This document shows, piece after piece, positions 9,329 through 22,111 of a stretch of DNA of 64,000 bases. The position numbers and the translations under genes were made by a program. The notes beneath the pieces are model-generated. The model saw only the letters and a list, made by a program, of their open reading frames with translations, ran no database searches and was not told the origin of the DNA. The DNA is taken from positions 186,001-250,000 of IMG/VR virus record IMGVR_UViG_3300046692_000091. The stretch is one strand, 5' to 3'. Each line of letters begins with the position of its first letter. Position 1 is the first letter of the stretch.

Positions 9329-9378
9329 CGGCATAAAGGCTACCCTTCGGGGTAGCCGATATACCTTATTTTTTTTTA
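9329..9378. terminator. bidirectional terminator between convergent genes
   Basis: CGGCATAAA-GGCTACCC-TTCG-GGGTAGCC followed by a T-tract. Confidence 0.85.
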
Positions 9379-11202
9379 CTTCCCGTAGGAACGCAACCAA
9401 CGACCGATGCAAGGATCGAAGTTAGATTTGTATTTCAGGAATTTCAGGAACAGTTCTTCCAAGCGTGGATGTTCACGCAACACCATCGCACTACGAGTTA
9501 CCTTAATGAAGTCTTCAGCTGGGATCACAATAGTTGGATCTTCCAGAACTCTGGCCAGTTCAGGTAGTCGATCGATGTTCTGGAAAGCTTTCCATGCATC
9601 TTCTACATCACCGTAAATCATCTTAGGGATACTATCCTGGGAGATGTTGAACAGTGTGAATGGACCTTCATGTTCACGTAGTGTTACTTCGGTACCATCA
9701 CCGAAACGATTCAACCAACGCTCGTTATTGCAGAACAGATCAACGTAGTGCTCTGTAGCTGTAACATTTCCCACTGCCTCCAGCAAACTACGCATGGCTG
9801 CAATGTTAGGCATGTTTACAATACGAACGCCATTCCCTACGAACAACTCAGGATGGAACTCATCAGCATCTACTTCAACATGTAGAACCATGATTGCTTT
9901 ATCATCACCAGAATCCTTCTCGAATACATAAGCATTCTTACGATACTTAGGATTAGACAGAGTTGGTAGCTCATCAACATTATCCAGGACAGCTTTCTGG
10001 ATAGCACTGATTACCTCTTCTGGGTTTTCAATTTCTTTACCCAGCGTAATATGGATGGTTTTCTTTTCTTCTGCGATTCTAGCCGTCTTGGCAATTTCAT
10101 CAGTAAGGTAATGATCTGGTTTGATATCTACATTCAGATCTGCTTCTGGGTATGCCGAACGGAAGTATCCGATCGTGCACAGTGGCGATGTATCAGTGTC
10201 ATCAACTTTCAGATTGATAGTCATCTTACCTTTAGCTTCACGGACCGTATCGAACGGACCAGCATCGGCACCACAGTCTGGATCTTCACCCTCACCGAAG
10301 ACACCACAGTCATCCAGATCTACACCTTCATCAGCTAAGGCAACTTCGTCATCTTCCAGATCCACGAGACTACTCACACGGTCAGTATGATAACGCGATT
10401 CAACGCCAGTGACAATGATCAATGTATTCGTTTTCTTAGGGAGACCCAATGAACGATCACCTTCTGACAAAGTGGTATCAGCGATGTTAAGTTTGGTGTT
10501 ATATTGCCCTACGCTAGCCAGTAAATCATGGATATAACGGGAGAGCGCTTCTGCACCAGAATTACTATCAAATCCAGTGACAGTAACATGGACGGTATTC
10601 ACATCTGGATCGGCAGCATCCATGTCTTCGATAGGAGCTGGTTCTTTCGATGTCCGAGCAATGATGTCTTTGTACTCAGGCATTTCAGTTACGTCTACTT
10701 GGAACAGGTGCGCTAGAACGCGTGCAGCTGCTATGTTAGCTTTACCATGTTCTATGCCGGAGTCCATGATAGGGCAAGCTGTATTGCAAACCCAGGACCA
10801 CAGATACGATGGGTCAGAAGCCATAGCTACTTTCAATGTATCGAAAGCTTTTGTGATCTCGTTCTGTTCTGGTACCACGGGGAGAGTTTCATCAATAACT
10901 GGGCCGACTACCGAATCTTCCTCGGTCATAGCACGGGCACATTCATGTGGTCCATCCGTGGTATAACTGAAGGTGCTGGTAATAGTCATATCGACGAACC
11001 AATCCATGCCTTTGAATTCATCTACGAATAGACGGAACACACCATCACCCATAGTGCTTACACTGGTGACGTAATTGAACGGGTCGGCTTGCAGATAACG
11101 GGCGACCAGTAGACCGAAATTAACTGATGGTTTGGCTAGAGGACGACTGACTTCTTCAATTGCCCGATGTACTATTTCTAACAGCGTTGTTTGCGATGAC
11201 AT
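9376..11202 (-). CDS. large acidic hypothetical protein
   Basis: Long ORF (track to 11307); likely ATG 11202; D/E-rich centre. Confidence 0.8.
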   Translation of the reverse strand: MSSQTTLLEIVHRAIEEVSRPLAKPSVNFGLLVARYLQADPFNYVTSVSTMGDGVFRLFVDEFKGMDWFVDMTITSTFSYTTDGPHECARAMTEEDSVVGPVIDETLPVVPEQNEITKAFDTLKVAMASDPSYLWSWVCNTACPIMDSGIEHGKANIAAARVLAHLFQVDVTEMPEYKDIIARTSKEPAPIEDMDAADPDVNTVHVTVTGFDSNSGAEALSRYIHDLLASVGQYNTKLNIADTTLSEGDRSLGLPKKTNTLIIVTGVESRYHTDRVSSLVDLEDDEVALADEGVDLDDCGVFGEGEDPDCGADAGPFDTVREAKGKMTINLKVDDTDTSPLCTIGYFRSAYPEADLNVDIKPDHYLTDEIAKTARIAEEKKTIHITLGKEIENPEEVISAIQKAVLDNVDELPTLSNPKYRKNAYVFEKDSGDDKAIMVLHVEVDADEFHPELFVGNGVRIVNMPNIAAMRSLLEAVGNVTATEHYVDLFCNNERWLNRFGDGTEVTLREHEGPFTLFNISQDSIPKMIYGDVEDAWKAFQNIDRLPELARVLEDPTIVIPAEDFIKVTRSAMVLREHPRLEELFLKFLKYKSNFDPCIGRWLRSYGK

Positions 11203-11204
11203 GT

Positions 11205-12122
11205 TTATACCTGTTGTGTTGATTGAGTGGCACGATGTCCACGTAGACGGATTTTGGTAACACCTGGAGCTTCTACCCAAACTGTAGCGACCATGTCCTC
11301 TGTACACTCGGTACGAACGGAATAATCATCAGCAGGGAATTCTTCACCGAGTTGTTTCAGTACGGCAAGCTTAATATTATCTGCGAATTCTACAGCAGTA
11401 CGATCTTGCTCATGTGCTAGGAATGCATCGGTAAATGCACGATTAGCAGCCATGGTTAGAACCAGAGTCTTTTCACTGCGACCACGTTGTGCTTTGGAGA
11501 TCGGCGCAGGATCGATAGATTCTTTCACAGTTGGTTGCATTGGGTGTTCCTGTTCTTCGTAACGTTTGTATTCGATAGAGGCTTCTACTACCATGCCAAC
11601 TCGGACATCTTCTACATTGACACGGAAAGACAAGTCCTTACCGACTCCACCAGTAACATTCACTTCGAAGTCTTCTTCCAGACCATCGTAATGTGCAACT
11701 AGTTCACGGCGGATCTCTTCTTCCGATTTCAGTACCAGTTGATGCAGTGTAAGAGATGCGTCACCAGTCAACTTAGCGAAGACCTTAGACACAATTCCTT
11801 CCAGTACTTCTGCCAGAGTCTGTGATTTACTCTCAGGAGCTGGGCTGAGTTCAGCATAAACAGTTGTGACGTACTTGGCACCATCATGTTCGATAACAGC
11901 ATTCACCTCGAACGTGGACTGTACCCCCTTCCAGTGAATGCAGGTACTGATACCCACACTCTTGCCTGGATATTCTTTGCGCATCATGGCTTGTATGCCA
12001 TCGGCTACTTTCTCACGGAGGATATGATTATCCGATGTAACATCATCACGTACACTTGCAACTACTTCGTTCGTGAAGTCTTGTAGGTTCGTATCGAACA
12101 AAGCTTTTTCTAATCCACCCAT
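11205..12122 (-). CDS. hypothetical protein
   Basis: 305-aa ORF directly downstream of rtcB. Confidence 0.8.
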   Translation of the reverse strand: MGGLEKALFDTNLQDFTNEVVASVRDDVTSDNHILREKVADGIQAMMRKEYPGKSVGISTCIHWKGVQSTFEVNAVIEHDGAKYVTTVYAELSPAPESKSQTLAEVLEGIVSKVFAKLTGDASLTLHQLVLKSEEEIRRELVAHYDGLEEDFEVNVTGGVGKDLSFRVNVEDVRVGMVVEASIEYKRYEEQEHPMQPTVKESIDPAPISKAQRGRSEKTLVLTMAANRAFTDAFLAHEQDRTAVEFADNIKLAVLKQLGEEFPADDYSVRTECTEDMVATVWVEAPGVTKIRLRGHRATQSTQQV

Positions 12123-12125
12123 GAC

Positions 12126-13385
12126 TTAACCTTTTACGCAGAGAATTTGTTTGAGAGTATGGACGATGTCCACGAGTTGTTCTTGTGCAGACATTACGTC
12201 TTCGATGTTCTTGTAAGCTTTTGGTGTTTCATCGATGACAGAGATATCCTTACGACATTCTACACCAGCTGTATCACGGACATGATCTTCCAGGGTGAAT
12301 GTCTTAGCAGCCTGAGTACGGGACATGACTCGGCCAGCTCCGTGTGAACACGAGCAGAAAGAATCACGGTTACCTTTACCACGGACGATGAAAGACTTAG
12401 CGCCCATCGAACCAGGGATAATCCCGAGTGTACCTTTATCTGCGTTCACTGCACCCTTACGAGTTACCAGAACGTTGTTACCGAAGTGGCGTTCTTCTGA
12501 TACGTAGTTGTGGTGGCAGTTGATGGCCGACATATCGGAATCGATTGGCAGACCTAGAGTACGGTGGATAGCACCAAGAGTAGCATGCATCATGATCGAA
12601 CGGTTAAGTGCAGCGAAGCGTTGTGCCCAGGACACGGCTTCGATGTAGTCGTTGTAATATTGCGAACCTTCGGGGAGGTAAGCGAGATCACCATCTGGCA
12701 GATGAATGAAGAAACGTTTCATTTCTTCTTTTGCTTTCGAGATAAAGTAAGTACCGATTGCGTTACCGATACCACGAGAACCAGAGTGCAGCATCACCCA
12801 CACTTGATCGGATTCATCCAGACAGATCTCGATGAAGTGGTTACCTGTACCGAGAGTACCTACATGGTTCCATGCACGAGCTGCAGCTTTCGCCAACTTA
12901 GGATGACGTTCTACAATACGTTCCAGATGCTTACGCAGTTTCTCTGCTTCATCACGGATAGCTTGAGATTGGTGAGTGAACACGGATACCGTACCAAATG
13001 CACCACGATCGTTCTTCCCACCGTTGTCAGTACGGCCATGAGGCACTGAGGCTTCGATAGCGGCACGCAAATGGCCAAGAGAGGTCGGTAGTGCTGTGGA
13101 CTTAAAAGTAAGGCGCTGCGCAGCCATACCACAACCGATATCAACACCTACTGCGGCTGGAATGATTGCGCCTTTAGTAGCAACCACAGAACCCACTGTT
13201 GCACCTTTACCCAAGTGTACGTCGGGCATCACAGCAATGTGCGAATAGATGAATGGGAGGGCAGCAATGTTCTTGAGTTGAGAAATTGCTTCTTTCTCTA
13301 CTGGTACGCCAACGGTCCAGCCTTTGATTGGTTTAGAACCTGGTTCTACTGTATCACCAATCAGTTCAAATGTTTTCTGTTTCAT
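12126..13385 (-). CDS. rtcB: RtcB family 3'-phosphate RNA ligase
   Basis: Motifs MPDVHLGKGATVGSV, VGVDIGCG, GTLGTGNHFIE, MLHSGSRG, CHHNY, IPGSMG, SCSHGAGR, DETPKAYK. Confidence 0.97.
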   Translation of the reverse strand: MKQKTFELIGDTVEPGSKPIKGWTVGVPVEKEAISQLKNIAALPFIYSHIAVMPDVHLGKGATVGSVVATKGAIIPAAVGVDIGCGMAAQRLTFKSTALPTSLGHLRAAIEASVPHGRTDNGGKNDRGAFGTVSVFTHQSQAIRDEAEKLRKHLERIVERHPKLAKAAARAWNHVGTLGTGNHFIEICLDESDQVWVMLHSGSRGIGNAIGTYFISKAKEEMKRFFIHLPDGDLAYLPEGSQYYNDYIEAVSWAQRFAALNRSIMMHATLGAIHRTLGLPIDSDMSAINCHHNYVSEERHFGNNVLVTRKGAVNADKGTLGIIPGSMGAKSFIVRGKGNRDSFCSCSHGAGRVMSRTQAAKTFTLEDHVRDTAGVECRKDISVIDETPKAYKNIEDVMSAQEQLVDIVHTLKQILCVKG

Positions 13386-13449
13386 ATAAAGCCTCACGCG
13401 GATGGAAAGAGGAATTGTTACATACACTGACTTTGCCAGTATTATTAAA

Positions 13450-13491: not shown

Positions 13492-13809
13492 CTACTTGTT
13501 ACTCAGATGGCATTGAAGATCTGCCATGACGTCGTCCGCAACCTTACGTCGCCCTAACATTCCTGTTAGTTCTTCAAGGGTGCATTCTTCAGGGTCCCAT
13601 TGACCTTCTAGTCCCATACAGGAGCAGTGTGATCCATGGACTTCATAGTACTTACCATTCTGTTCGTAGAGCACGTAGGCGGACCCACTGTAATCTTCGT
13701 AAGTATAGTCAGCGTGTATGATAGTTACCCCTTCAAGCTCAGACATCCGTACATCAAAACTCAATGCTACGTCTTCAATATCACCTTCGGACCAATCGTT
13801 GTAAAACAT
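13492..13809 (-). CDS. acidic hypothetical phage protein
   Basis: 105-aa ORF with YSGSAYV and GSHCSCMGLEGQW motifs. Confidence 0.8.
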   Translation of the reverse strand: MFYNDWSEGDIEDVALSFDVRMSELEGVTIIHADYTYEDYSGSAYVLYEQNGKYYEVHGSHCSCMGLEGQWDPEECTLEELTGMLGRRKVADDVMADLQCHLSNK

Positions 13810-13924
13810 GTTCTATACCTTTAAGCGTGATTACGATGCTCGTAATCTTCATTTGCTTATTGCGTATAGTCCTGTATAATGTATCTCTACCAGTATTTCT
13901 TTATCTGGATGAGACAGCATAATG

Positions 13925-14222
13925 AGAACCCTAAGGCCCCCTATGCTTAAGTAATCTACAATACCAATGGCCGGCCTGCTCTATCGCCCACCTATAGGGA
14001 GCGATCATTGGTAAATGTAGCGCCACGAGTTGGCAGTATCTTTCCAGTCACGGACACCACTCATCGGGTGCCTCTATGGACCATCAAGATAGTTGAACTT
14101 ATGACTCGGCATCAGAGAGACTGTCACATCTCTAAGCACCATTCGGGTTGAAGCTTGACAGGCTTCGTTTTGTAGGTCTTCCTCCTTGTGTGTAGTAACC
14201 GCGCAACGCTACACTCTGGTCG
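13925..14222 (-). ncRNA. putative ~300-nt structured ncRNA
   Basis: ORF-free; promoter motif at 14223-14244; helices GTGTAG/CTACAC, AGAGA/TCTCT, GGCACC/GGTGTC, TACCAATG/CATTGGTA. 3' boundary approximate. Confidence 0.6.
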
Positions 14223-14244
14223 TATACTATTACGTTCTCAGTAT
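14223..14244 (-). promoter_or_regulatory. putative ncRNA-associated promoter motif
   Basis: ATACT-gagaac-GTAATAGTATA on the minus strand. Confidence 0.7.
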
Positions 14245-14245
14245 T

Positions 14246-15130
14246 TTATTTCAGGAAAGTACCACAACTTGCTTGTACATCAGTACCAACGCGAGGAATT
14301 AGTTTTACACGTGCATTGGGTAATCGGCGTTTGATGTAACGATGTAAGTAATCGATATGGCCTTCTACTGGTTCACGAGAGTAATGCCCTTCTGGTGGAT
14401 TGTACCGAACGATGTTCCAATTAACCTCTAACTGATATCCATCGATCACATCCAGGATAGCTTTAACATCAGCAAGGTTATCATTTTCATGTTCAATGAA
14501 AGCGTAGTGGATCTTCGGAACTTTGCCTGTGTGCAGCTGCCAGTCTTTGAGGATTGCGAATGCATCTCGTGGGTAACCCGCTTTAGGTAACCAACGTTTA
14601 CGAAACCGATCATTCAATGAGTAGACCGAATAATAAATCTCGGGGTATACCTCTGGATCAGTGAACACCGATTCAAGTGACCGGCGACTAAACTCTTCTG
14701 GCATGATAGTAGATATCAGGAACTTTGATTCAAGTCCATATCTGGCTGCACGTTTCTTTAAGCCACGCAAGATCTCATCGGCATTACTTAGAAAGATCTT
14801 ATTAGCTAAAGGTTCGCCTCGTGCCATGAAGTTGAAATGGACCATCTTAGCTGGATGCTTGTCGGCATAGTATCGTAGGACTTCATCTGCTTGCTGCCAG
14901 AATTCTTCAATCGTGGTATCACGTAGTTTATTCTGACCTGTTGCAGTTAACCAGCACATCCGGCAAGCTTGCTTACAACCTGTCTGAGACGACAAGTAAA
15001 CAATGAAGTAGTCATCAACCCGACGTACATATCGTGCCTCTAGCATCCCTGGGTGATCTTCAAAGCGGTGTTCGAAGTTTACTGATTGATCGAGTTGGGA
15101 TACATGTTGTTTAAAGATTAGATTATCCAT
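14246..15130 (-). CDS. RlmN/Cfr-like radical SAM protein
   Basis: SSQTGCKQACRMC (CxxxCxxC), FMARGEPLAN (MGMGEP-like), C-terminal ASCG. Confidence 0.85.
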   Translation of the reverse strand: MDNLIFKQHVSQLDQSVNFEHRFEDHPGMLEARYVRRVDDYFIVYLSSQTGCKQACRMCWLTATGQNKLRDTTIEEFWQQADEVLRYYADKHPAKMVHFNFMARGEPLANKIFLSNADEILRGLKKRAARYGLESKFLISTIMPEEFSRRSLESVFTDPEVYPEIYYSVYSLNDRFRKRWLPKAGYPRDAFAILKDWQLHTGKVPKIHYAFIEHENDNLADVKAILDVIDGYQLEVNWNIVRYNPPEGHYSREPVEGHIDYLHRYIKRRLPNARVKLIPRVGTDVQASCGTFLK

Positions 15131-15516
15131 TAGCTAATAGTCCCTATTTGCCATCCATCCAGACGTAGTGAGATATAACCTTTTCGACCTTCTTCTACAT
15201 ACACTGCAGTTGGTTCATATGCCCGGTAAGCTTTTTGTCGATCGGTAAACCCATTACGAATATCATGCATTGCCATTTCTAATTTGGAACACATTTGTAG
15301 CGTGCTATATGCGCTGTCTCCACGCATGTCATTGAAATATGGCTGTAGTGCTGATCCATAAGCAACTACGGCTTCATTGATTGGTTGTGGACCTTTGTAC
15401 CGGGTTAGCTCAGCTTCATAGGCATCGAACGCTGCTGTCTGTTTACGTCTAGCTATGCCTTGGTTAAGTCGTTCAACCACTGCTCGTTCGCGTGGCCGAA
15501 ATCTGTTTGGGCGCAT
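15130..15516 (-). CDS. hypothetical protein
   Basis: SD AAAGGA; TAATG-coupled to the radical SAM gene. Confidence 0.7.
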   Translation of the reverse strand: MRPNRFRPRERAVVERLNQGIARRKQTAAFDAYEAELTRYKGPQPINEAVVAYGSALQPYFNDMRGDSAYSTLQMCSKLEMAMHDIRNGFTDRQKAYRAYEPTAVYVEEGRKGYISLRLDGWQIGTIS

Positions 15517-15540
15517 TGTATATTCCTTTTGTATGATTGC

Positions 15541-15570
15541 GGGCATAAAGGCTATCCCGAAGGATAACCC
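15541..15570 (-). terminator. hairpin terminator-like element after tRNA cluster
   Basis: Minus strand GGTTATCC-TTCG-GGATAGCC-TTTATGCCC; the G-U pair forms only on the minus strand. Confidence 0.75.
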
Positions 15571-15595: not shown

Positions 15596-15671
<76 letters not shown>

Positions 15672-15676
15672 TAATT

Positions 15677-15765
15677 TGGCGGAAGCATAGAGATTCGAAC
15701 TCTAGGGGCTGTTACACCCGACGGTTTTCAAGACCGTTGCCTTAAGCCATCTCGGCCATGCTTCC
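15677..15765 (-). tRNA. tRNA-Ser(TGA)
   Basis: Class II cloverleaf with long variable arm; loop CT-TGA-AA; CCA. Confidence 0.95.
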
Positions 15766-15780
15766 TGTGTTGCTTTTGTA

Positions 15781-15866
15781 TGGTGCGGACAGAGAGACTC
15801 GAACTCTCACGCCCTAAGGGCGCTGGAACCTAAATCCAGTGCGTCTACCAATTCCGCCATGTCCGC
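15781..15866 (-). tRNA. tRNA-Leu(TAG)
   Basis: Class II cloverleaf; CTGGA-TTTAGGT-TCCAG; CCA. Confidence 0.95.
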
Positions 15867-15868
15867 TG

Positions 15869-15890
15869 TATATTATTACACACCAAGTAT
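15869..15890 (-). promoter_or_regulatory. putative ncRNA-associated promoter motif
   Basis: ATACT-tggtgt-GTAATAATATA ends 2 nt before tRNA-Leu position 1. Confidence 0.7.
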
Positions 15891-15897
15891 TTTTTTA

Positions 15898-16629
15898 TTA
15901 GACTACGCTGGGGGTGTAATTATTGGTGTAACGCACGTAGTTACTAATTCTTACATTACCTAGGTAACGAGGAACGTTATTAGCGTTGCTGTTTAGAGCA
16001 CCTAGGTATAACGTAGACAAGTTAGCGAAGTTACTAGCTGGTCCACTCTGGAAGAAACCAGATAATGTTCCACCTGAAACTCCAGGCTGCATGTCTTGTA
16101 GTACGCCGTTAATATAGAATCTTAGGCGGCGATTAGTATCGCAGGTCATTGCGTATTTAGTGACTATATTCGTAAAGGTGTTGAAGGTAACTGCCGGGTA
16201 ACGACACTCTGACTTCGCTCCACTGTTGCTGTTATCAGAGAACATCAATAGATTACCATAACCGGCATCACCAAAGCGCATGGTGAAACCTTTGAGTAAT
16301 GACGAATCTGTCATATAGAATTCGTTTGTCCAAGCCGTAGCATTACCTGGGCGAAGTTCTGACCACTCGATTGTCCAATTGGTACTAGACAAATCCAAGA
16401 GTGGGTTGAAAGCCATGAATAAACGCGAACCACTACCACCAGCTGTAGGCATAGATAGGGTTGGTTTATTATCAATTAGTGTTGTGTTACTCACCACTGC
16501 GCCAGCGGATATTGTGATGGGTCTATTACTAACAGTCTCGGTCACTGTGGCCATGTCAATATACAGGATCACATCACCTGTTTCTGGCGGGACCGAGCTC
16601 GAACTTGGTGATAGTAGTAATTCATACAT
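15898..16629 (-). CDS. LamG/concanavalin A-like lectin-fold protein, probably virion-associated
   Basis: LDLSSTNWTIEW and GNVRISNYVRYTNNYTP signatures; paralog of 18676..19395. Confidence 0.7.
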   Translation of the reverse strand: MYELLLSPSSSSVPPETGDVILYIDMATVTETVSNRPITISAGAVVSNTTLIDNKPTLSMPTAGGSGSRLFMAFNPLLDLSSTNWTIEWSELRPGNATAWTNEFYMTDSSLLKGFTMRFGDAGYGNLLMFSDNSNSGAKSECRYPAVTFNTFTNIVTKYAMTCDTNRRLRFYINGVLQDMQPGVSGGTLSGFFQSGPASNFANLSTLYLGALNSNANNVPRYLGNVRISNYVRYTNNYTPSVV

Positions 16630-16692
16630 GTTGATTATCCTGGTTATATAAACATATAATTAGGTGATAGTCAAAATCCCCTTTGCATAATA

Positions 16693-16725
16693 CAGCATAA
16701 AGCTTCCCCAAAGGGAAGCACTATG
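16693..16725 (-). terminator. hairpin terminator-like element
   Basis: GCATAAA-GCTTCCC-CAAA-GGGAAGC-ACTATG on + strand, just downstream of tRNA-Leu(TAA). Confidence 0.75.
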
Positions 16726-16727
16726 TT

Positions 16728-16814
16728 TGGTGCGGGGAGCGGGATTCGAACCCAGCGAGCCTGTACAGGCGGCGGCTTTTAAGGCCGCTATGTATTCCGC
16801 TCCATCATCCCCGC
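16728..16814 (-). tRNA. tRNA-Leu(TAA)
   Basis: GCGGC-CTTAAAA-GCCGC anticodon arm; variable arm; TTCGAAT T-loop; CCA. Confidence 0.92.
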
Positions 16815-16827
16815 GTGTAACTAAATT

Positions 16828-17668
16828 CGGTCCCAGCATCCAGGATTCAAGCCCTGGTTATCAACGAACACGGGGTCGTTGGTAGATCGCCGCTGGGCGA
16901 GCTTTTCATCCCAATGTACAGCTTGAGCTGGTCGCGGCATTCCGCTAGAGGTCAAACCGTTCCGAAGGGTCTATCTACTTACTCGCCTTACAACGCTTCA
17001 GAGTGATGGAGGGCAAGTAAAAGAATCGGGGTAACCCACTATTCCCTTGGCAGCGGTCATGGTTTAAGATGACTTGCGGAATAGCTCGTTACATGGGTGC
17101 ACTATAGCGTACACGTCGCTGCCTTTCGGCCTTCTCATCGATTACCAGCCGCAGCTAGTTCTCTGTGTATGGCCCAGTAGCCTCTTTACGGGAGTCATCT
17201 ACTGGGAAGGTTACCACTACAGGACTATCACCTTCTATGGCCTGGTATTCCAACCAGTTCATGTAACCAAGACGGACATCTGATCCGTTGCAGCCGAGTC
17301 GTAACGCTTCTTCGGTATGGCGCCTTAGTAGTCAGGACTATCTGACCTTTGGGGTATCATGAGTACGGGCTTCGAGTTTCCCTGATATTCCACTATTCTA
17401 GTCTTTTGTGGAACGTCATTGGGTATCATTCGTAGATCTATACAAGTGTAACTCTGTGCCCTAGTCTGAGGATTAATCAGACACCTGTATTGATCCGAGC
17501 CTATCCCTTCCAGGCTAGGTCTTCACACTCCCACTTCTGGGGGAATGCGTATGTAAAAGTTTGATGGAACGATCCTCTACCTTCATCTATTCGGACTTAG
17601 GCGACCTTTTCAGCACAGTGGGGTGGAGTGCACTTACCCAACATCCTACCATGTCTTTCACATGCTCT
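16828..17668 (-). ncRNA. putative ~850-nt highly structured ncRNA
   Basis: No credible ORF; more than 10 visible helices, a GAAA tetraloop, a repeated loop motif; G-U pairs favour the minus strand. Boundaries approximate. Confidence 0.7.
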
Positions 17669-18343
17669 TTATTCGTGCGTAGTAGACAGCTCAGAGATAA
17701 TGCAGATCGAACCATCTTCAACCGGAGTGGTATCGGAGTAATCAACCTGATTGTAAACACCACCATGGAACTGGAAGGTTTCATATTTCCACGAACTATC
17801 TAGCTTCAGCACTGGGCAGACTGACTTACGACCTTGGCAAAGCACTGACGCCGATACGGAACCAGCAGCTGTGACATGTAAGCTAATCTTGAATGGTACA
17901 CCCAATGGAACGTCTTCTATTAGTGTAAAGTTGTTTATTAGTGCGTCATCGAAGTTAGCTCGGAAACCAGCTGTGATCTTCCCTTTATTCCAGAAGACTT
18001 TCAGTGGCGGAGTTGTAGCATCTTTGACATGGACTTGTGCAATTACCACTTTCTTAGCCGAGTTGACTTTAGTAACAGTCATCTCTTGGCGAGACCAGTG
18101 ATGTGCTGCGCTAGTAAGAGACCAATAAGCTGGTTCTTTCCATTCACAGCGTGTGCGATGTGTACTTTTGCTGGACGCCCCTAATGTGGGCGCAGAGAGT
18201 TGAATAGAACCGTCTTCCAATTGACTGACCACTTCTGGACATCTTACCAAGGCTTCCGAACCGAGGAGCTCCAATGCAACCGGATTCTCATCAGAGACCG
18301 GTAATGGAGTAGCAATCAAATAGTTACTGATATCAACGAACAT
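17669..18343 (-). CDS. polysaccharide lyase family 7 (alginate lyase-like)
   Basis: RTRCEWKE (RxExR-like), IAQVH (QIH-like) and FHGGVYNQ (YFKAGxYxQ-like) in the PL7 order. Confidence 0.85.
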   Translation of the reverse strand: MFVDISNYLIATPLPVSDENPVALELLGSEALVRCPEVVSQLEDGSIQLSAPTLGASSKSTHRTRCEWKEPAYWSLTSAAHHWSRQEMTVTKVNSAKKVVIAQVHVKDATTPPLKVFWNKGKITAGFRANFDDALINNFTLIEDVPLGVPFKISLHVTAAGSVSASVLCQGRKSVCPVLKLDSSWKYETFQFHGGVYNQVDYSDTTPVEDGSICIISELSTTHE

Positions 18344-18361
18344 TTTAACTCTCTTTTGAAA

Positions 18362-18437
18362 TGGCGGGCATCCAGGGAGTCGAACCCCGAACCGACGGAT
18401 TTGGAATCCGTTACTCTGCCAATTGAGCTAGACACCC
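18362..18437 (-). tRNA. tRNA-Trp(CCA)
   Basis: ACGGA-TTCCAAA-TCCGT anticodon arm; G73; CCA. Confidence 0.93.
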
Positions 18438-18444
18438 GAATGAA

Positions 18445-18528
18445 GAAAGGGAACAGGAATCGAACCTGCGTTTCCGGCTTGGTACTTATGGTGGCCACCG
18501 GTGTCCTAGGCCGCTAGACGACCCCTCT
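18445..18528 (-). ncRNA. tRNA-like RNA (Glu-type body) with 18-nt anticodon loop
   Basis: AGAGGGG-TC-GTCT-AGCGGCCT-AGGAC-A-CCGGT-[18 nt]-GCCGG-AAAC-GCAGG-TTCGATT-CCTGT-TCCCTTT-C; no CCA. Confidence 0.7.
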
Positions 18529-18646
18529 CACAAACTTGGTCGGGTTTTTGTTAAACCAGGCTAACCGATATCCCTGGTCCCTATCGAGTAAGCTCTAGGG
18601 GAGTCTTACTCTTACGCTCGTTTGGAGACTTAACGACAGTCTCTCG

Positions 18647-18668
18647 TATACTATTACACTGCCAGTAT
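18647..18668 (-). promoter_or_regulatory. putative ncRNA-associated promoter motif
   Basis: ATACT-ggcagt-GTAATAGTATA. Confidence 0.7.
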
Positions 18669-18675
18669 TTTGTTA

Positions 18676-19395
18676 TTACAACTCTAGTGGGCCAGGAGTA
18701 TAGTTACGTGTATATCTAGCGAAGTTACTAAGTCGAACTCTACCGTGATGCCCAGGAACAGCACGTACCGAACTACCGTTCGAATCACCAAATATAAGCG
18801 AGGTGATATTGATCAGTGCTGTTGGTGTAATCGTTTGCATAATGTAGGTTCCATTAGCTGCACCCTTAGCCAATGGGAGTCTCTGTCCATTACGGTAAAT
18901 AAAGATCTGACCATTCTTACATACAAATGCCCATCTACTCAAATTACTAACTAAGGCAGCTTTAGTGAATTGGGTATTATAACAATCGGCTGGTGCAGAG
19001 GCTGTGTTATCCCCCAAATGGAGTCTGTCTAAGAAACCAGAGTCACCATACCTGAAGAATAGTCCACGGCCAGCTGTTGAACTAGTCATTGAAAATTCAA
19101 GGGCATAGGCAGTAGGGGCGGTGTCGTTTATAGATGACCATTCTAATGTCCAGTTTATTGCACTTAAGTTGAGAGGGGCTGCAAATGTCATCACCTGTTT
19201 AGCTGCAACCGTTGGGTATTGCATACTGCCTTGCCCATCGATTAAATACCCAGCGTCAGCTATTGCTCCACCGGTATTGTTGGTGACGGTACCTAACCCA
19301 GATAGATCGGTGGCGGTAACTGGATCATACAAGAATAACACATCCCCTGTGTCCTCCACTGGTAAACTACCCCCAGCTAATAATGCCTCATACAT
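18676..19395 (-). CDS. LamG/concanavalin A-like lectin-fold protein, probably virion-associated
   Basis: LNLSAINWTLEW and GRVRLSNFARYTRNYTP; paralog of 15898..16629. Confidence 0.7.
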   Translation of the reverse strand: MYEALLAGGSLPVEDTGDVLFLYDPVTATDLSGLGTVTNNTGGAIADAGYLIDGQGSMQYPTVAAKQVMTFAAPLNLSAINWTLEWSSINDTAPTAYALEFSMTSSTAGRGLFFRYGDSGFLDRLHLGDNTASAPADCYNTQFTKAALVSNLSRWAFVCKNGQIFIYRNGQRLPLAKGAANGTYIMQTITPTALINITSLIFGDSNGSSVRAVPGHHGRVRLSNFARYTRNYTPGPLEL

Positions 19396-19434
19396 GACGG
19401 TGTGTCCTTTGGTTTATCAATTCAAACTATTGGG

Positions 19435-19460
19435 CGACATAAGAGTAGCCGAAGCTACTC
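19435..19460 (-). terminator. hairpin terminator-like element
   Basis: Minus strand GAGTAGC-TTCG-GCTACTC-TTATGTCG. Confidence 0.75.
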
Positions 19461-19653
19461 ATCCATAAAGAGTTCCCCAGTTAACAACTTTATTCAGTTG
19501 TTCTTGAGTAGGGATTTTATCTCTGACTCGTTGCTCGCATTCTTTATCGAATTGTTCCATTCTGATACGTGCTTCTTTGAGCCTTTCTTTTTGTTCATCT
19601 GTCAGTGGTTCTAATGCGTTACGTGAGAGTGCTATTAAAGTAGCCAGGCTCAT
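19459..19653 (-). CDS. microprotein paralog 5 (64 aa)
   Basis: ATGA-coupled; MSLATLI...PTQEQLNKVV. Confidence 0.75.
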   Translation of the reverse strand: MSLATLIALSRNALEPLTDEQKERLKEARIRMEQFDKECEQRVRDKIPTQEQLNKVVNWGTLYG

Positions 19654-19832
19654 ATCGTGATCAGCCTATTCAAGAGTTCTTGTGAAGGAGCCGTACGCGC
19701 GTGGCGCTCGTCAATCTCTTTGTTATATCCCCGCATTCTTTCATAGAACGCTATATTCCTTTTCTCACGCTCTTCGGCAGATATTGGTTCAGCTCTTTTA
19801 TTAGCCAGATCTATTAAAGCTTTCAGGCTCAT
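19650..19832 (-). CDS. microprotein paralog 4 (60 aa)
   Basis: ATGA-coupled; MSLKALI...PSQELLNRLITI. Confidence 0.75.
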   Translation of the reverse strand: MSLKALIDLANKRAEPISAEEREKRNIAFYERMRGYNKEIDERHARTAPSQELLNRLITI

Positions 19833-19996
19833 AATGAGATTACTCTGTTTAAGAGTTCTTCTGTAACTACTGAGGCTTTCCATTCCTTGGATAACCGGAT
19901 GTTAGTCTGTCTCATTCTTTCTTGGGCAACGGAAAGGCTTTCTTCATGTGTACCATTGCGCGTACGAGCATCTTCGATGAGTTGTTCAAGTGTCAT
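19829..19996 (-). CDS. microprotein paralog 3 (55 aa; not in ORF track)
   Basis: MTLEQLIEDARTRNGTHEESLSVAQERMRQTNIRLSKEWKASVVTEELLNRVISL; ATGA-coupled on both sides. Confidence 0.75.
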   Translation of the reverse strand: MTLEQLIEDARTRNGTHEESLSVAQERMRQTNIRLSKEWKASVVTEELLNRVISL

Positions 19997-20160
19997 AACG
20001 TACATCTCTTAGCTAAAAGTTCAGGGGTAACTTTCTGCTTCTCGAAGTCTTCAGCACACCGCTTATTAAAAGCAGCCGAACGTTTAGCATGGGCTGCCAT
20101 GCGTTCTTCTTTAGTGCCCATGCTATCTCTTACAGCTTTACACAGTGCCTCTAGACTCAT
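19993..20160 (-). CDS. microprotein paralog 2 (55 aa; not in ORF track)
   Basis: MSLEALCKAVRDSMGTKEERMAAHAKRSAAFNKRCAEDFEKQKVTPELLAKRCTL; ATGA-coupled. Confidence 0.75.
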   Translation of the reverse strand: MSLEALCKAVRDSMGTKEERMAAHAKRSAAFNKRCAEDFEKQKVTPELLAKRCTL

Positions 20161-20342
20161 AACGTACACCTTTTGTTCAAGATCTCAGGAGTCATTTGTT
20201 GATTTTTCAACTGTTGCTCCAGCCTCTGGTCCAGTTCAGACATATATTTCTTTTGATACTCTTGAAACTCTACCTGTGTCATACCCATAGCCGATGCAAT
20301 CCGATCTGCCATTCGTTCAATTAATCCCGGTGTCATTGCCAT
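20157..20342 (-). CDS. microprotein paralog 1 (61 aa)
   Basis: Ends MTPEILNKRCTL; TAATG-coupled to the upstream gene. Confidence 0.75.
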   Translation of the reverse strand: MAMTPGLIERMADRIASAMGMTQVEFQEYQKKYMSELDQRLEQQLKNQQMTPEILNKRCTL

Positions 20343-20605
20343 TAATCCACCTGTATCTGTACATAGACTCTTGTCACACCATGCACGAAGTCATAGTTGC
20401 TTACGTACTGTGCTTCATTCAAAGGCTTAGCACTGATCCATACTTGGATGATATCCTGTCCACACTTACGTAGGATCTTAGATACACGGTTCTGGATACG
20501 TCTACGACCTACTGCAGATATCTTAGGGAACTCACGCTTTAACATGAGTACCATGCGTTCATGGCATTCTTTGCCACGCTGTACTTCTGATGGGGTTCTA
20601 TGCAT
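20342..20605 (-). CDS. small basic hypothetical protein
   Basis: Likely ATG 20605 (TAATG overlap); track ORF 20342..20650. Confidence 0.65.
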   Translation of the reverse strand: MHRTPSEVQRGKECHERMVLMLKREFPKISAVGRRRIQNRVSKILRKCGQDIIQVWISAKPLNEAQYVSNYDFVHGVTRVYVQIQVD

Positions 20606-20859
20606 TAGTGCATCACCATTGAACCTTCGAGATGGCAAGCGCAACGACACAGTTGTGTTTCTGTATCGCCATCAACCACAATCAACAGACTAGGATAGAA
20701 TTGACGTTTAGCAAAAACTAGCTTACCCCATTCTGATTCTGTATCATCTCGTTCAATAGCTACAGCCGTTTCACTAAAGTTCTTTTTTAGGAAAGCTTCA
20801 CTCAGTGTGTGATCTTTATTGAGGTATTGACGTTCACTTCTTGCGCAACAAGGTACCAT
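20605..20859 (-). CDS. hypothetical protein
   Basis: SD AGAGGA; ATG 20859. Confidence 0.6.
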   Translation of the reverse strand: MVPCCARSERQYLNKDHTLSEAFLKKNFSETAVAIERDDTESEWGKLVFAKRQFYPSLLIVVDGDTETQLCRCACHLEGSMVMH

Positions 20860-20883
20860 TGGATATTCCTCTTTTGGATTAGA

Positions 20884-20916
20884 CAGCATAAAGGAGATCC
20901 GAAGATCTCCTTTATT
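20884..20916 (-). terminator. hairpin terminator after tRNA operon
   Basis: AAAGGAGATC-CGAA-GATCTCCTTT on + strand; minus strand reads TTCG loop then TTTATGCTG. Confidence 0.8.
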
Positions 20917-20920
20917 GAAT

Positions 20921-20996
20921 TGGCTCCGAGACTAGGATTCGAACCTAGGACCAACGCATTAACAGTGCGCGGCTCTACCAACTGAGCTATCTCGAA
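20921..20996 (-). tRNA. tRNA-Asn(GTT)
   Basis: GCGCA-CTGTTAA-TGCGT; G73; CCA. Confidence 0.93.
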
Positions 20997-20997
20997 A

Positions 20998-21074
20998 TGG
21001 CTCCATGACCTGGACTCGAACCAGGGACACCTTGATTAACAGTCAAGTGCTACTACCAACTGAGCTATCATGGA
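20998..21074 (-). tRNA. tRNA-Asn(GTT)
   Basis: CTTGA-CTGTTAA-TCAAG; G73; CCA. Confidence 0.93.
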
Positions 21075-21231
21075 ATGTACTGGGATGCCGGGCTTTACCG
21101 GATGATCGTTTTATCTAGACTCCCTCTCATGTCTAGCGATGCTTGTATCCCCAAGGATAGCCTAGGCTTGCAGCGAGCTAACGGTTACCCGTTTGGTGCA
21201 AGAGCTGATCTAGTCTACCGATGGAAATTCT

Positions 21232-21315
21232 TTATCTATCAGCGGGTCTTGAAGCCGCACACGGTCGATGGTATTTAGCCAACGATTGTCCTACCGATTG
21301 GACGATGATAGATAA
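21232..21315 (-). ncRNA. degenerate tRNA-like RNA with extended anticodon arm
   Basis: TTATCTATCA/TGATAGATAA closing stem; D-arm GTCC-AATCGGTA-GGAC; 7-bp arm TCGTTGG/CCATCGA; T-like arm GCGG-CTTCAAGAC-CCGC. Confidence 0.55.
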
Positions 21316-21439
21316 TGAAACGTTTACCTAGACAGTTCCCTAATAACTGATTACCCTGCGCGTCAGGTCGTTCGTTTATTAGGTAGGCGTGTATGCGACG
21401 CCTCGTTTTAGTTCTGCTCCTAAGAGCCTTCTGTCTAGC

Positions 21440-21519
21440 ACGCCCCTACCGGATTTGAACCGATGACCGATCAACGTATGGTTACCGTCGATTGCTCTAC
21501 CTAGCTGAGCTAAGGGGCG
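21440..21519 (-). ncRNA. tRNA-like RNA (Ile2/Met-type body) with 7-bp anticodon stem and 9-nt loop
   Basis: CGCCCCT-TA-GCTC-AGCTAGGTA-GAGC-A-ATCGACG-GTAACCATA-CGTTGAT-CGGTC-ATCGG-TTCAAAT-CCGGT-AGGGGCG-T; no CCA. Confidence 0.75.
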
Positions 21520-21523
21520 ACAA

Positions 21524-21608
21524 TGGTGGGTGCAGAAGGATTCGAACCTTCGAAGTCAGCGACGGGAGATTTACAATCTCCTGGGTTTGGCCACTCCCCA
21601 ACACACCC
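21524..21608 (-). tRNA. tRNA-Tyr(GTA)
   Basis: GGAGA-TTGTAAA-TCTCC; long variable arm; CCA. Confidence 0.93.
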
Positions 21609-21853
21609 GTATCAGCAGCAGCCGGTCCACCCGGTCATGAGGTTTTAACTCTTCTGTGCTGATAGTAAAACATTTGAAATTAGCTATGGAGAAAGGCGAC
21701 TCGTTTTATCTCCTGACTTGTACCCATGCACCCATTATTGATCCACTGGGCGACTCCTTTAGTGTGGATCGGGCTGTACCTTACCGTCGTTGTAAGCTAA
21801 TTTCAAAACTAACGAGGCAGTAGAAGTCCGAAGGACCAATACCACCTCTAAGA

Positions 21854-21930
21854 TGGCGCAACCAGCGGGACTCGAACCCGCGACCTCTTGCGTGACAGGC
21901 AAGCATTCTAACCAACTGAACTATGGCTGC
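21854..21930 (-). tRNA. tRNA-Asp(GTC)
   Basis: CTTGC-CTGTCAC-GCAAG; G73; CCA. Confidence 0.95.
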
Positions 21931-21933
21931 AAT

Positions 21934-22026
21934 AAACTAGTCGCGCTTTAACCCGCGTAAGCTAATAGCCCTGTTATGGCGGGCCGTCCAAATCAAGGGA
22001 GTTGAACCCGAGTTCTCGACTAGTTT
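21934..22026 (-). ncRNA. four-way-junction RNA with T-like and D-like arms in permuted order
   Basis: 10-bp closing stem AAACTAGTCG/CGACTAGTTT; arms GGG-TTCAACT-CCC, GCCC-9nt-GGGC, CGC-GGGTTAAA-GCG. Confidence 0.55.
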
Positions 22027-22033
22027 AAAAAAA

Positions 22034-22111
22034 TGGGGTGAGCTACGGGTCTCGAACCCGTGACCTCCAGGGTCACATCCTGGCACTCTAACCAACTGAG
22101 CTAAGCCCAAC
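22034..22111 (-). tRNA. tRNA-His(GTG)
   Basis: CCAGG-ATGTGAC-CCTGG; G-1:C73; CCA; atypical A32 and U1.C72. Confidence 0.85.

What the first reader, a model, noticed from the sequence alone, without database searches (positions are those of the whole stretch)
14246..15130. RlmN-like radical SAM enzyme lacks the resolving cysteine
Seen: VYLSSQTGCKQACRMC places Tyr at the position seven residues before the first cluster Cys, while the C-terminal ASCG Cys is kept. Known: E. coli RlmN has LCVSSQVGC, where C118 resolves the covalent enzyme-RNA adduct formed via C355, and C118 mutants stay cross-linked to RNA. Known RlmN tRNA targets include Asp and His, both encoded here with A37. Inference: altered chemistry, a different modification, or a covalent RNA-trapping protein.
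Basis: partly seen in the sequence, partly recalled or inferred. Interest (0 to 1): 0.6.

Follow-up and report, generated by a model that had tools for sequence, protein, structure and literature searches.

The report
Phage RlmN-like enzyme with tyrosine swap
A jumbo phage gene encodes a radical SAM enzyme built like the RNA methylases RlmN and Cfr, but an invariant tyrosine sits where those enzymes need a cysteine to release their RNA, and this holds across a large, mostly viral, unstudied family.

Summary
The ORF at 14246-15130 (minus strand, 294 aa) is a radical SAM protein. Its only relatives with solved structures are RlmN and Cfr (model against RlmN-tRNA 5HR7: Z 29.7, rmsd 2.2 A). Tyr45 aligns with RlmN C118 / Cfr C105. 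Cys289 aligns with the methyl-carrier C355/C338. The protein has only four cysteines, three on the cluster plus C289, so no compensating cysteine exists.

This is not a one-off. The Tyr is present in 118/118 close homologues, in 147/148 representatives of 50%-identity clusters, and in 154/154 fetched loci (80 TAC, 74 TAT codons). The family forms one clade on a very long branch from RlmN. It lacks the N-terminal HhH2 RNA-docking domain and is mostly viral. In the five bacterial genomes checked it sits beside a canonical RlmN.

No curated family model and no paper I found covers it. My best reading is an active class-A-type methylase in which Tyr45 replaces the thiol base. The substrate is unknown; RNA adenine is likeliest by homology. 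A covalent RNA trap is unlikely, because a trap would not need an invariant Tyr. Gene context gives no firm substrate clue. I rate it a new variant of a known kind, of moderate to high interest.

The parts
14246..15130 (-). ORF of 294 aa: an RlmN/Cfr-type radical SAM enzyme of the Tyr-type clade (PHROG 27142)
14996..14998 (-). Codon TAC for Tyr45, at the position of RlmN C118 / Cfr C105 (the residue that resolves the enzyme-RNA crosslink)
   Evidence: conservation
14954..14977 (-). CX3CX2C motif (C52, C56, C59) that binds the [4Fe-4S] cluster
   Evidence: these columns are invariant in alignment A1
14264..14266 (-). Codon TGT for Cys289 in the C-terminal ASCG loop, equivalent to the methyl-carrier C355 (RlmN) / C338 (Cfr)
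14819..14821 (-). Arg104 in the motif FMARGEP. This family-specific Arg (95%) sits where RlmN/Cfr have the Met of MGMGEP
14621..14623 (-). Tyr170, invariant in the family, where RlmN/Cfr have the His of the SLH motif. It belongs to a family-specific Tyr-rich set (Y45, Y166, Y167, Y170)
15130..15546 (-). Upstream ORF of 138 aa whose stop overlaps the enzyme's start (TAATG). Function unknown. It is conserved only in the closest relatives
15596..22110 (-). Array of 11 tRNA genes on the same strand, upstream of the enzyme gene. These are all the tRNA genes of this phage genome
12126..13427 (-). RtcB RNA ligase gene, downstream on the same strand

Best explanation
The gene encodes an active radical SAM enzyme from a distinct, mostly phage-borne sister clade of the class A methylases RlmN and Cfr.

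Shown:
- It has the RlmN core fold, equivalent to RlmN residues 77-360.
- It has the cluster motif, the SAM-binding motifs, and the mobile C-terminal loop carrying the methyl-carrier cysteine (C289).
- It lacks the N-terminal HhH2 RNA-docking domain.
- It has an invariant Tyr where RlmN/Cfr have the cysteine that removes the proton from the enzyme-RNA adduct.

Inferred:
- It works by the same ping-pong scheme. One SAM methylates C289. A second SAM is cleaved to the 5'-deoxyadenosyl radical, which takes a hydrogen from methyl-C289. [quoted passage not shown]
- Tyr45, as a tyrosinate, takes and returns the proton so that the C-S bond breaks and the enzyme turns over. The family-specific R37 and R104 may help activate it.
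- By homology the substrate is most likely an adenine in a folded RNA loop, such as a tRNA anticodon loop. It must be recognised differently from RlmN, because the docking domain is missing and several nucleotide-contacting residues differ.
- In this phage the gene sits between the tRNA array and RtcB, which fits a role in tRNA biology during infection.
For: - **Homology and fold.** NCBIfam RlmN and Cfr models are the only sizeable hits. The family profile matches Cfr at 4e-26 and RlmN at 1e-19. HHalign probability is 99.8%. The AF2 model has pLDDT 96.6. Foldseek's top hits are all RlmN-type, ahead of Cfr. VIA-align gives Z 29.7, rmsd 2.2 A over 271 residues to tRNA-crosslinked RlmN 5HR7, against about Z 16 for other radical SAM folds.
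- **Catalytic apparatus under selection.** E31, C52, C56, C59, G105, S168, Y170, C289 and G290 are invariant, and Y45 is 99% conserved, across 134 diverse members.
- **The Tyr itself.** It is kept in 154/154 loci with 80 TAC and 74 TAT codons, although Cys is one transition away.
- **No other conserved Cys**.
- **Mechanism literature.** C118/C105 is now described as the base that abstracts and returns the C2/C8 proton, not as a disulfide partner.
- **A natural Cys variant.** P0234 lies nested inside the Tyr clade on two phage contigs, which suggests the two residues can substitute for each other.
- **Not a replacement for RlmN.** The five bacterial genomes tested each also carry a canonical RlmN.
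- **Local context.** The order tRNA array, enzyme gene, RtcB is shared with Psa21 and other relatives.
Against: - No biochemical data exist for any member.
- Ser and Ala at this position trap the crosslink in RlmN/Cfr, and nobody has shown that Tyr can resolve it.
- Several residues that contact the target nucleotide in Cfr differ here: Y97 to R37, W101 to Y41, S103 to I43, M157 to R104, H214 to Y170. The target base or carbon may therefore differ.
- The RNA-docking domain, described as crucial for rRNA binding, is absent.
- Gene context does not consistently point to RNA. 201phi2-1 has the gene but no tRNA hit, and CcrColossus and Bajun carry it more than 40 kb from their tRNA arrays. In T4-like lineages it lies between core DNA-metabolism genes.
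- I could not inspect the model geometry around Tyr45.
Confidence: 0.5

Rival explanations
1. Same scaffold, different reaction. The clade modifies another position, another base or another class of substrate (DNA, a nucleotide or a small molecule). Tyr45, together with the family-specific tyrosines Y166, Y167 and Y170, would act as a hydrogen-atom or radical relay rather than as a simple base, giving a product other than m2A or m8A.
For: - The clade is separated from RlmN by a stem of 4.9 substitutions per site.
- It scores 55 bits against RlmN's curated cut-off of 290.
- Many nucleotide-contacting and active-site residues are replaced by residues that are themselves invariant: R37, R104, Y166, Y167, Y170.
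- There is no RNA-docking domain.
- The gene occurs in phages without tRNA genes and next to DNA and nucleotide-metabolism genes, including a dCMP-deaminase-like gene that abuts it in L018 and L076.
- The ESM Atlas holds a Bacillota cluster that fuses a deaminase domain to an RlmN-like fold.
Against: - The C-terminal loop (RVGxDVxASCG) closely mirrors the RlmN/Cfr loop whose backbone holds the adenine N1/N6.
- The methyl-carrier Cys is invariant, which argues for the methyl-Cys route.
- The DNA-gene neighbours are T4-type core genes, between which accessory genes are commonly inserted, so they say little about function.
- Deaminase adjacency is seen in only four of 21 lineages.
Confidence: 0.3
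2. A single-turnover covalent trap. Without a resolving cysteine the enzyme stays crosslinked to its target RNA and so disables host tRNA or rRNA, or marks it.
For: C118A/S and C105A/S variants of RlmN/Cfr accumulate the crosslink. This protein has no second cysteine.
Against: - A trap would need only the loss of the base, yet Tyr is fixed in 154/154 loci across synonymous codon turnover.
- The family is also kept in large bacterial chromosomes beside a normal RlmN, where a stoichiometric self-inactivating crosslinker would be costly.
- A tyrosinate is chemically able to abstract the proton. This last point is inference.
Confidence: 0.08
3. An ordinary RlmN orthologue (23S rRNA A2503 / tRNA A37 C2-methylase), as several database records name it.
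For: Sources name close homologues as 'ribosomal RNA large subunit methyltransferase N' or 'adenine C2-methylase RlmN'. The phage encodes tRNA-Asp and tRNA-His with A37.
Against: It scores 55 bits against a cut-off of 290. It has neither C118 nor the N-terminal domain. It belongs to a separate clade. Cellular carriers already have a true RlmN.
Confidence: 0.05

Closest known systems
RlmN (E. coli; PDB 3RFA, 5HR7), dual-specificity 23S rRNA A2503 / tRNA A37 C2-methylase
   Same: It shares the radical SAM core with the beta-strand extension, the CX3CX2C motif, the GEP and S-T motifs, and the C-terminal loop with the methyl-carrier Cys. The model superposes on RlmN residues 77-360 with Z 29.7 and rmsd 2.2 A.
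   Different: Tyr replaces C118. The N-terminal HhH2 domain (residues 1-76) and the C-terminal helix are absent. The motif is MARGEP instead of MGMGEP, S-x-Y instead of S-L-H, and RYNP instead of PWNP. Identity is 18%.
Cfr (S. aureus; PDB 9P0P; cryo-EM complex in PMC13001441), 23S rRNA A2503 C8-methylase
   Same: Cfr is the best sequence match among solved structures (4e-26 with the family profile). It shares the RYNP motif and the lack of RlmN's C-terminal helix, and C338 is equivalent to C289.
   Different: Cfr has C105, the HhH2 domain and different nucleotide-contacting residues (Y97, W101, S103, M157, H214). There is no evidence that the phage protein touches the ribosome or affects antibiotic susceptibility.
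Other phage RlmN-like proteins: Tunturiibacter phage Tunturi_5 gp170 and Klebsiella phage 05F01 gp104
   Same: Both are short forms without the N-terminal domain, have an HLT/HTT motif after the cluster, and have the C-terminal SCGMF/ACGMF loop.
   Different: Tunturi_5 keeps Cys at the C118 position. 05F01 has Val there and a Cys three residues later. Both are about 25% identical to the window protein and lie outside the Tyr clade.
Spore photoproduct lyase (analogy in chemistry only; from background knowledge, not tested here)
   Same: It is a radical SAM nucleic-acid enzyme in which a Cys and a Tyr together pass a hydrogen atom. This shows that Tyr can take part in such relays.
   Different: It has a different fold subgroup and a different reaction (VIA Z 13.8). 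It is not a relative in any close sense.

Membership tests
RlmN/Cfr class A radical SAM methylases | CX3CX2C motif binding the radical SAM [4Fe-4S] cluster | tested here: met
   C52, C56 and C59 are invariant in alignment A1.
RlmN/Cfr class A radical SAM methylases | Methyl-carrier cysteine in the flexible C-terminal loop (C355 in RlmN, C338 in Cfr) | tested here: met
   C289 aligns with it and is invariant.
RlmN/Cfr class A radical SAM methylases | Second cysteine (C118 in RlmN, C105 in Cfr) that resolves the enzyme-RNA crosslink | tested here: not met
   Tyr45 occupies the position. No other conserved Cys exists.
RlmN/Cfr class A radical SAM methylases | N-terminal HhH2 RNA-binding domain (Pfam RlmN_N) | tested here: not met
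   The model spans RlmN residues 77-360 only. There is no Pfam hit, and only about 8 residues precede the core.
RlmN/Cfr class A radical SAM methylases | RlmN-type core fold with the beta-strand extension | tested here: met
   Foldseek E 1e-16 and TM 0.76-0.79. VIA Z 26-30, against about 16 for other radical SAM enzymes.
RlmN (TIGR00048) / Cfr (TIGR04432, NF000424) equivalogs | Score above the curated family cut-off | tested here: not met
   55 bits against a cut-off of 290, and 40-44 bits against cut-offs of 530-550.
RlmN/Cfr class A radical SAM methylases | C2 or C8 methylation of A2503 (23S rRNA) or A37 (tRNA) | not testable with these tools
   This needs enzyme assays and nucleoside mass spectrometry.
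PHROG 27142 ('Fe-S-cluster redox domain-containing') | Full-length match to the family profile | tested here: met
   E 2.4e-149, residues 2-294 on profile positions 2-300 of 300.

The most novel reading that the evidence does not exclude
The Tyr-type clade is a third functional branch of the class A radical SAM methylases. It would turn over without a second cysteine, using a tyrosine (perhaps a tyrosine network) to resolve the methylene-bridged adduct. It would install a nucleic-acid modification that phages use during infection, for example on tRNA anticodon loops in the conflict with host tRNA-targeting defences. If so, nature has already run the 'C118 to Tyr' experiment, and it would settle that crosslink resolution needs a base rather than a thiol or disulfide.
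Probability: 0.3. Interest if true: 0.8.

Novelty: new variant of a known kind. Interest (0 to 1): 0.6.

Why it matters
RlmN and Cfr are the textbook case of methylation through a protein-bound methylene radical, and the role of the second cysteine has been debated (disulfide partner or general base). A natural clade of thousands of sequences has replaced that cysteine with an invariant tyrosine while keeping the methyl-carrier cysteine. That gives a direct, testable handle on the question.

The clade is also one of the few candidate nucleic-acid-modifying radical SAM enzymes that are mainly viral, so its product could be an unrecognised phage-made RNA (or DNA) modification.

On the practical side, a Y45F or Y45A variant could serve as a mechanism-based trap to find the substrate. 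Database labels such as 'RlmN' or 'Cfr family' on these genes are over-annotations and should not be read as rRNA methylase or resistance functions.

Tried and rejected
1. **AbiEii toxin neighbour.** My ORF clustering first suggested an AbiEii gene in 20 loci. Checking distances showed that the cluster consists mostly of spurious antisense ORFs lying over the enzyme gene in GC-rich genomes, with one or two real AbiEii genes attached. I rejected it.
2. **General linkage to tRNA genes.** tRNA genes lie within 5 kb in 6 of 21 viral lineages and inside tRNA arrays in several. Against that, 201phi2-1 has no tRNA hit, and CcrColossus, Bajun and others carry the gene 25-140 kb from their arrays. This is suggestive at best, not a rule.
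3. **Domain fusions.** Long upstream ORF extensions in GC-rich genomes, and the representatives with N-terminal extensions, carry no Pfam domain.
4. **The upstream 138-aa ORF as a stand-in for the missing HhH2 domain.** It has no Pfam, NCBIfam or PADLOC hit and is conserved only in the nearest relatives. I did not pursue it and ran no complex prediction.
5. **Defence-system libraries.** PADLOC gives no hit for the enzyme.
6. **Expression.** The only strong holder is a rhizosphere metagenome, and no RNA runs exist.
7. **Literature.** Eight full-text searches found no paper describing a Tyr-type RlmN/Cfr relative or a phage RlmN-like enzyme.
8. **Rfam.** It finds only tRNAs in the window.
9. **Model geometry.** The model's coordinates are not exposed to scripts, so I could not measure distances around Tyr45.
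10. **LRR and sulfotransferase-like neighbours in Planctomycetota and Myxococcota.** These are real but say nothing about the substrate.

Full report
**What is there**

The window is part of a 314,814-bp virus record, at positions 186001-250000. The best holder among public runs is a rhizosphere metagenome. Its nearest named relatives are the Pseudomonas jumbo phages Psa21, D6, 201phi2-1, Phabio, RVTF4 and Viktualia. From background knowledge, not tested here, these are phiKZ-like, nucleus-forming phages.

The ORF at 14246-15130 on the minus strand encodes 294 aa. Tyr45 (TAC, 14996-14998) lies seven residues before C52, and C289 is encoded at 14264-14266. The protein has four cysteines in all: C52, C56, C59 and C289.

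**Is it RlmN-like, and is the Tyr at the C118 position?**

- Pfam sees only a sub-threshold Radical_SAM match.
- NCBIfam's best hits are RlmN (TIGR00048, 55 bits against a cut-off of 290) and the Cfr models (40-44 bits against cut-offs of 530-550).
- Against PDB sequences, the single protein finds Cfr (4e-9) and RlmN (1e-3).
- A profile of 134 family members finds Cfr at 4e-26 and RlmN at 1e-19.
- HHalign against five cellular RlmN-type proteins gives 99.8% probability.

All these alignments are gap-free through the xSSQxGC motif. They place Tyr45 on RlmN C118 / Cfr C105 and C289 on C355/C338.

An AlphaFold2 model built on the family alignment is very confident (pLDDT 96.6). Foldseek ranks RlmN-type structures first (E about 1e-16, TM 0.76-0.79), followed by Cfr. 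VIA-align gives Z 29.7 and rmsd 2.2 A over 271 residues to tRNA-crosslinked RlmN (5HR7), with model residues 1-294 covering RlmN 77-360. Unrelated radical SAM enzymes reach about Z 16.

The protein is therefore the RlmN core without the N-terminal HhH2 domain and without RlmN's C-terminal helix. I could not read the model's coordinates, so the equivalence of Tyr45 and C118 rests on sequence and fold alignment, not on measured distances.

**It is a family trait**

- The word-index search found 2,553 proteins at E <= 0.001. All 118 of the best 120 that contain the cluster motif have Tyr at this position.
- The exhaustive search of 50%-identity representatives found 306 clusters at E <= 1e-30. 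Of the best 150, 147 of 148 with the motif have Tyr and one (P0234) has Cys.
- In 154 loci fetched from viral contigs, species-representative genomes and phage records, the residue is Tyr in all, encoded 80 times by TAC and 74 times by TAT. Cys is a single transition away, so the residue is under purifying selection.
- In alignment A1 the invariant residues are E31, C52, C56, C59, L61, T62, G105, S168, Y170, C289, G290 and F292. No other column is mostly Cys. A quarter of members have Cys at position 44, next to the Tyr, but the window protein has Val there.
- A maximum-likelihood tree puts all Tyr-type proteins in one clade (SH-aLRT 100) on a stem of 4.9 substitutions per site from canonical RlmNs and two Cys-bearing paralogues. 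P0234 is nested inside, so its Cys is secondary. P0234 occurs on two phage-like contigs, so it is not a lone read error.

**Where the family lives**

ESM Atlas clusters that match the protein are about 75% viral. Named phages carrying it include the Pseudomonas jumbo phages above, Caulobacter phages CcrColossus and CcrPW, and eight Brevundimonas phages.

It also occurs in bacterial DNA: Planctomycetota and Myxococcota chromosomes, Pseudomonas megaplasmids of about 1 Mb, and Nocardia, Achromobacter, Acetobacter and others. In the five such genomes tested, a canonical RlmN above the curated cut-off is also present. The Tyr-type protein is thus an extra paralogue, not a replacement.

**Differences from RlmN/Cfr beyond the Tyr**

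I used the Cfr-rRNA cryo-EM description and the alignments to map residues onto the family.

| Cfr residue | Role in Cfr | Family equivalent (conservation) |
|---|---|---|
| E91 | not looked up | E31 (100%) |
| M95 | van der Waals contact with A2503 | V35 (97%) |
| Y97 | H-bond to ribose 5'-O | R37 (99%) |
| W101 | inserts into the RNA U-turn | Y41 (66%) |
| S103 | H-bond to the A2503 ribose and the U2504 phosphate | I43 (I 58%, V 17%) |
| S153 | H-bond to the A2503 ribose and the U2504 phosphate | N100 (83%) |
| M157 of MGMGE | Met of the MGMGE motif (role not looked up) | R104 (95%) |
| T210-F211 | T210 H-bonds the U2504 base (O4) | Y166-Y167 (94%, 97%) |
| H214 of SLH | His of the SLH motif (role not looked up) | Y170 (100%) |
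| N288 | H-bond to the A2503 phosphate | N239 (96%) |
| F330, A336 | backbone holds adenine N1/N6 | V281, A287 (94% each) |

The C-terminal loop as a whole is closely mirrored (RVGxDVxASCG). The catalytic scaffold and the adenine-holding loop are therefore kept, while a set of active-site and nucleotide-contacting residues has been replaced by other, equally conserved residues. Many of those replacements are Tyr or Arg.

**Mechanistic reading**

A review and the 2026 Cfr structure preprint both describe C118/C105 as the residue that abstracts the C2/C8 proton of the radical adduct and later returns it. This triggers C-S fragmentation. Ala or Ser at this site traps the crosslink. A tyrosinate could in principle do this job, and the family-specific arginines may lower its pKa. 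Both points are inference.

Strict conservation of Tyr argues for a catalytic role and against a mere loss of function. That is why I rank a turnover enzyme above a covalent trap. The other replaced residues and the missing docking domain leave real room for a different target or product.

**Gene context**

In the window, the order on the minus strand is as follows:

1. eleven tRNA genes (22110 down to 15596; these are all the tRNA genes of the genome);
2. a 138-aa ORF whose stop overlaps the enzyme's start (TAATG);
3. the enzyme gene;
4. a 436-bp gap;
5. a 105-aa ORF;
6. RtcB;
7. two conserved proteins of unknown function.

Psa21 and several metagenomic relatives share the order tRNA array, enzyme, RtcB. 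Elsewhere the neighbours differ:

- between UvsX-like and UvsY-like genes, or after gp47/gp46-like genes, in T4-like contigs;
- after an NAD-dependent DNA ligase, near PARP-like and Dam genes;
- inside tRNA arrays in several unrelated contigs.

tRNA genes lie within 5 kb in 6 of 21 viral lineages. That is more than the roughly 5-15% I estimate for a random gene, but the test is rough. There are also clear counter-examples: 201phi2-1 has no tRNA hit, and CcrColossus and Bajun carry the gene far from their arrays.

In about 30 Planctomycetota and Myxococcota loci, the gene is divergently adjacent to an LRR protein with a TIGR02996 domain and a sulfotransferase-like gene. This tells nothing about the substrate. 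An apparent AbiEii association was an artefact of antisense ORFs.

**Known or new?**

No curated Pfam or NCBIfam model covers the clade. PHROG 27142 names it only 'Fe-S-cluster redox domain-containing'. Sources label members RlmN, Cfr family or hypothetical. Eight full-text searches found nothing on a Tyr-type RlmN/Cfr or on a phage RlmN-like enzyme. I call it a new variant of a known kind.

**Verdict**

The best explanation, at confidence 0.5, is an active class-A-type nucleic-acid methylase in which Tyr45 replaces the thiol base, acting most likely on RNA. Altered chemistry or a different substrate stands at 0.3, a covalent trap at 0.08, and an ordinary RlmN at 0.05.

No alternative genetic code was used.

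Noticed in passing
window 15596-22110 (minus strand): All 11 tRNA genes of the 314.8-kb phage genome lie in one 6.5-kb array just upstream of the enzyme gene: Thr x2, Ser, Leu x2, Trp, Asn x2, Tyr, Asp and His. Ten of the eleven have A37; Leu(TAG) has G37.
   Followed up: yes
window 9376-13427 (minus strand): RtcB (433 aa) is followed by two proteins of 305 and 643 aa with no Pfam, NCBIfam, PHROG or PADLOC match. The three genes travel together in eight related phage loci, which may mark an RNA-repair module with unknown partners.
   Followed up: partly
window 13810-14245: A 436-bp stretch between the enzyme gene and the next ORF has no ORF over 52 aa and no Rfam match. Folded as RNA on the minus strand, its energy z-score is -2.07 (3 of 100 shuffles fold as well).
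   Followed up: partly
window 15898-16629 and 18676-19395 (minus strand): Two paralogous proteins of about 240 aa are interleaved with the tRNA genes. Both match the C-terminal part of PHROG 3545, and a weak Laminin_G_3 (concanavalin-like) Pfam hit was obtained for the first; the second was not scanned against Pfam.
   Followed up: partly
window 13492-13809 (minus strand): A 105-aa protein (PHROG 8792) with a Cys/His-rich motif (HGSHCSC) sits between the enzyme gene and RtcB. The same family follows the enzyme gene in six relatives and appears in the tRNA array of the unrelated contig L038.
   Followed up: no
L058, L067, L080 (about 1-2 kb upstream of the enzyme gene): ARAGORN calls tRNAs with a CTA anticodon here (amber-suppressor type, labelled Pyl). 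These large phage contigs may read TAG as a sense codon.
   Followed up: no
L084-L137 (about 30 Planctomycetota and Myxococcota loci), 0.5-3 kb upstream of the enzyme gene: A conserved arrangement across two phyla: a sulfotransferase-like gene and an LRR protein with a TIGR02996 domain, both transcribed divergently from the Tyr-type enzyme gene.
   Followed up: partly
L170:2863-3792 (Klebsiella phage 05F01 gp104): Another short phage RlmN-like protein has Val at the C118 position and a Cys three residues later. It lies between an ADP-ribosyltransferase gene and an anaerobic ribonucleotide reductase gene. Tunturi_5 gp170 (L171) keeps the Cys.
   Followed up: partly
ESM Atlas structural hit; L018:8873-9226 and L076:7559-7996: A Bacillota cluster of 491-aa proteins joins a cytidine/adenosine-deaminase-type domain to an RlmN-like fold. 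Small dCMP-deaminase-like genes directly abut the Tyr-type gene in two unrelated phage contigs and lie within about 1 kb of it in two more (L027, L052).
   Followed up: partly
alignment A1, column of window residue 44: A quarter of family members have Cys immediately before the invariant Tyr (xCYLSS). The window protein has Val. On a beta strand this side chain should face away from the Tyr, but I could not check this on the model.
   Followed up: no
L112, L114, L153, L168 (Pseudomonas megaplasmids of 0.9-1.1 Mb): The Tyr-type gene sits in long same-strand runs of hypothetical genes of 350-450 aa on non-mobilizable megaplasmids.
   Followed up: no
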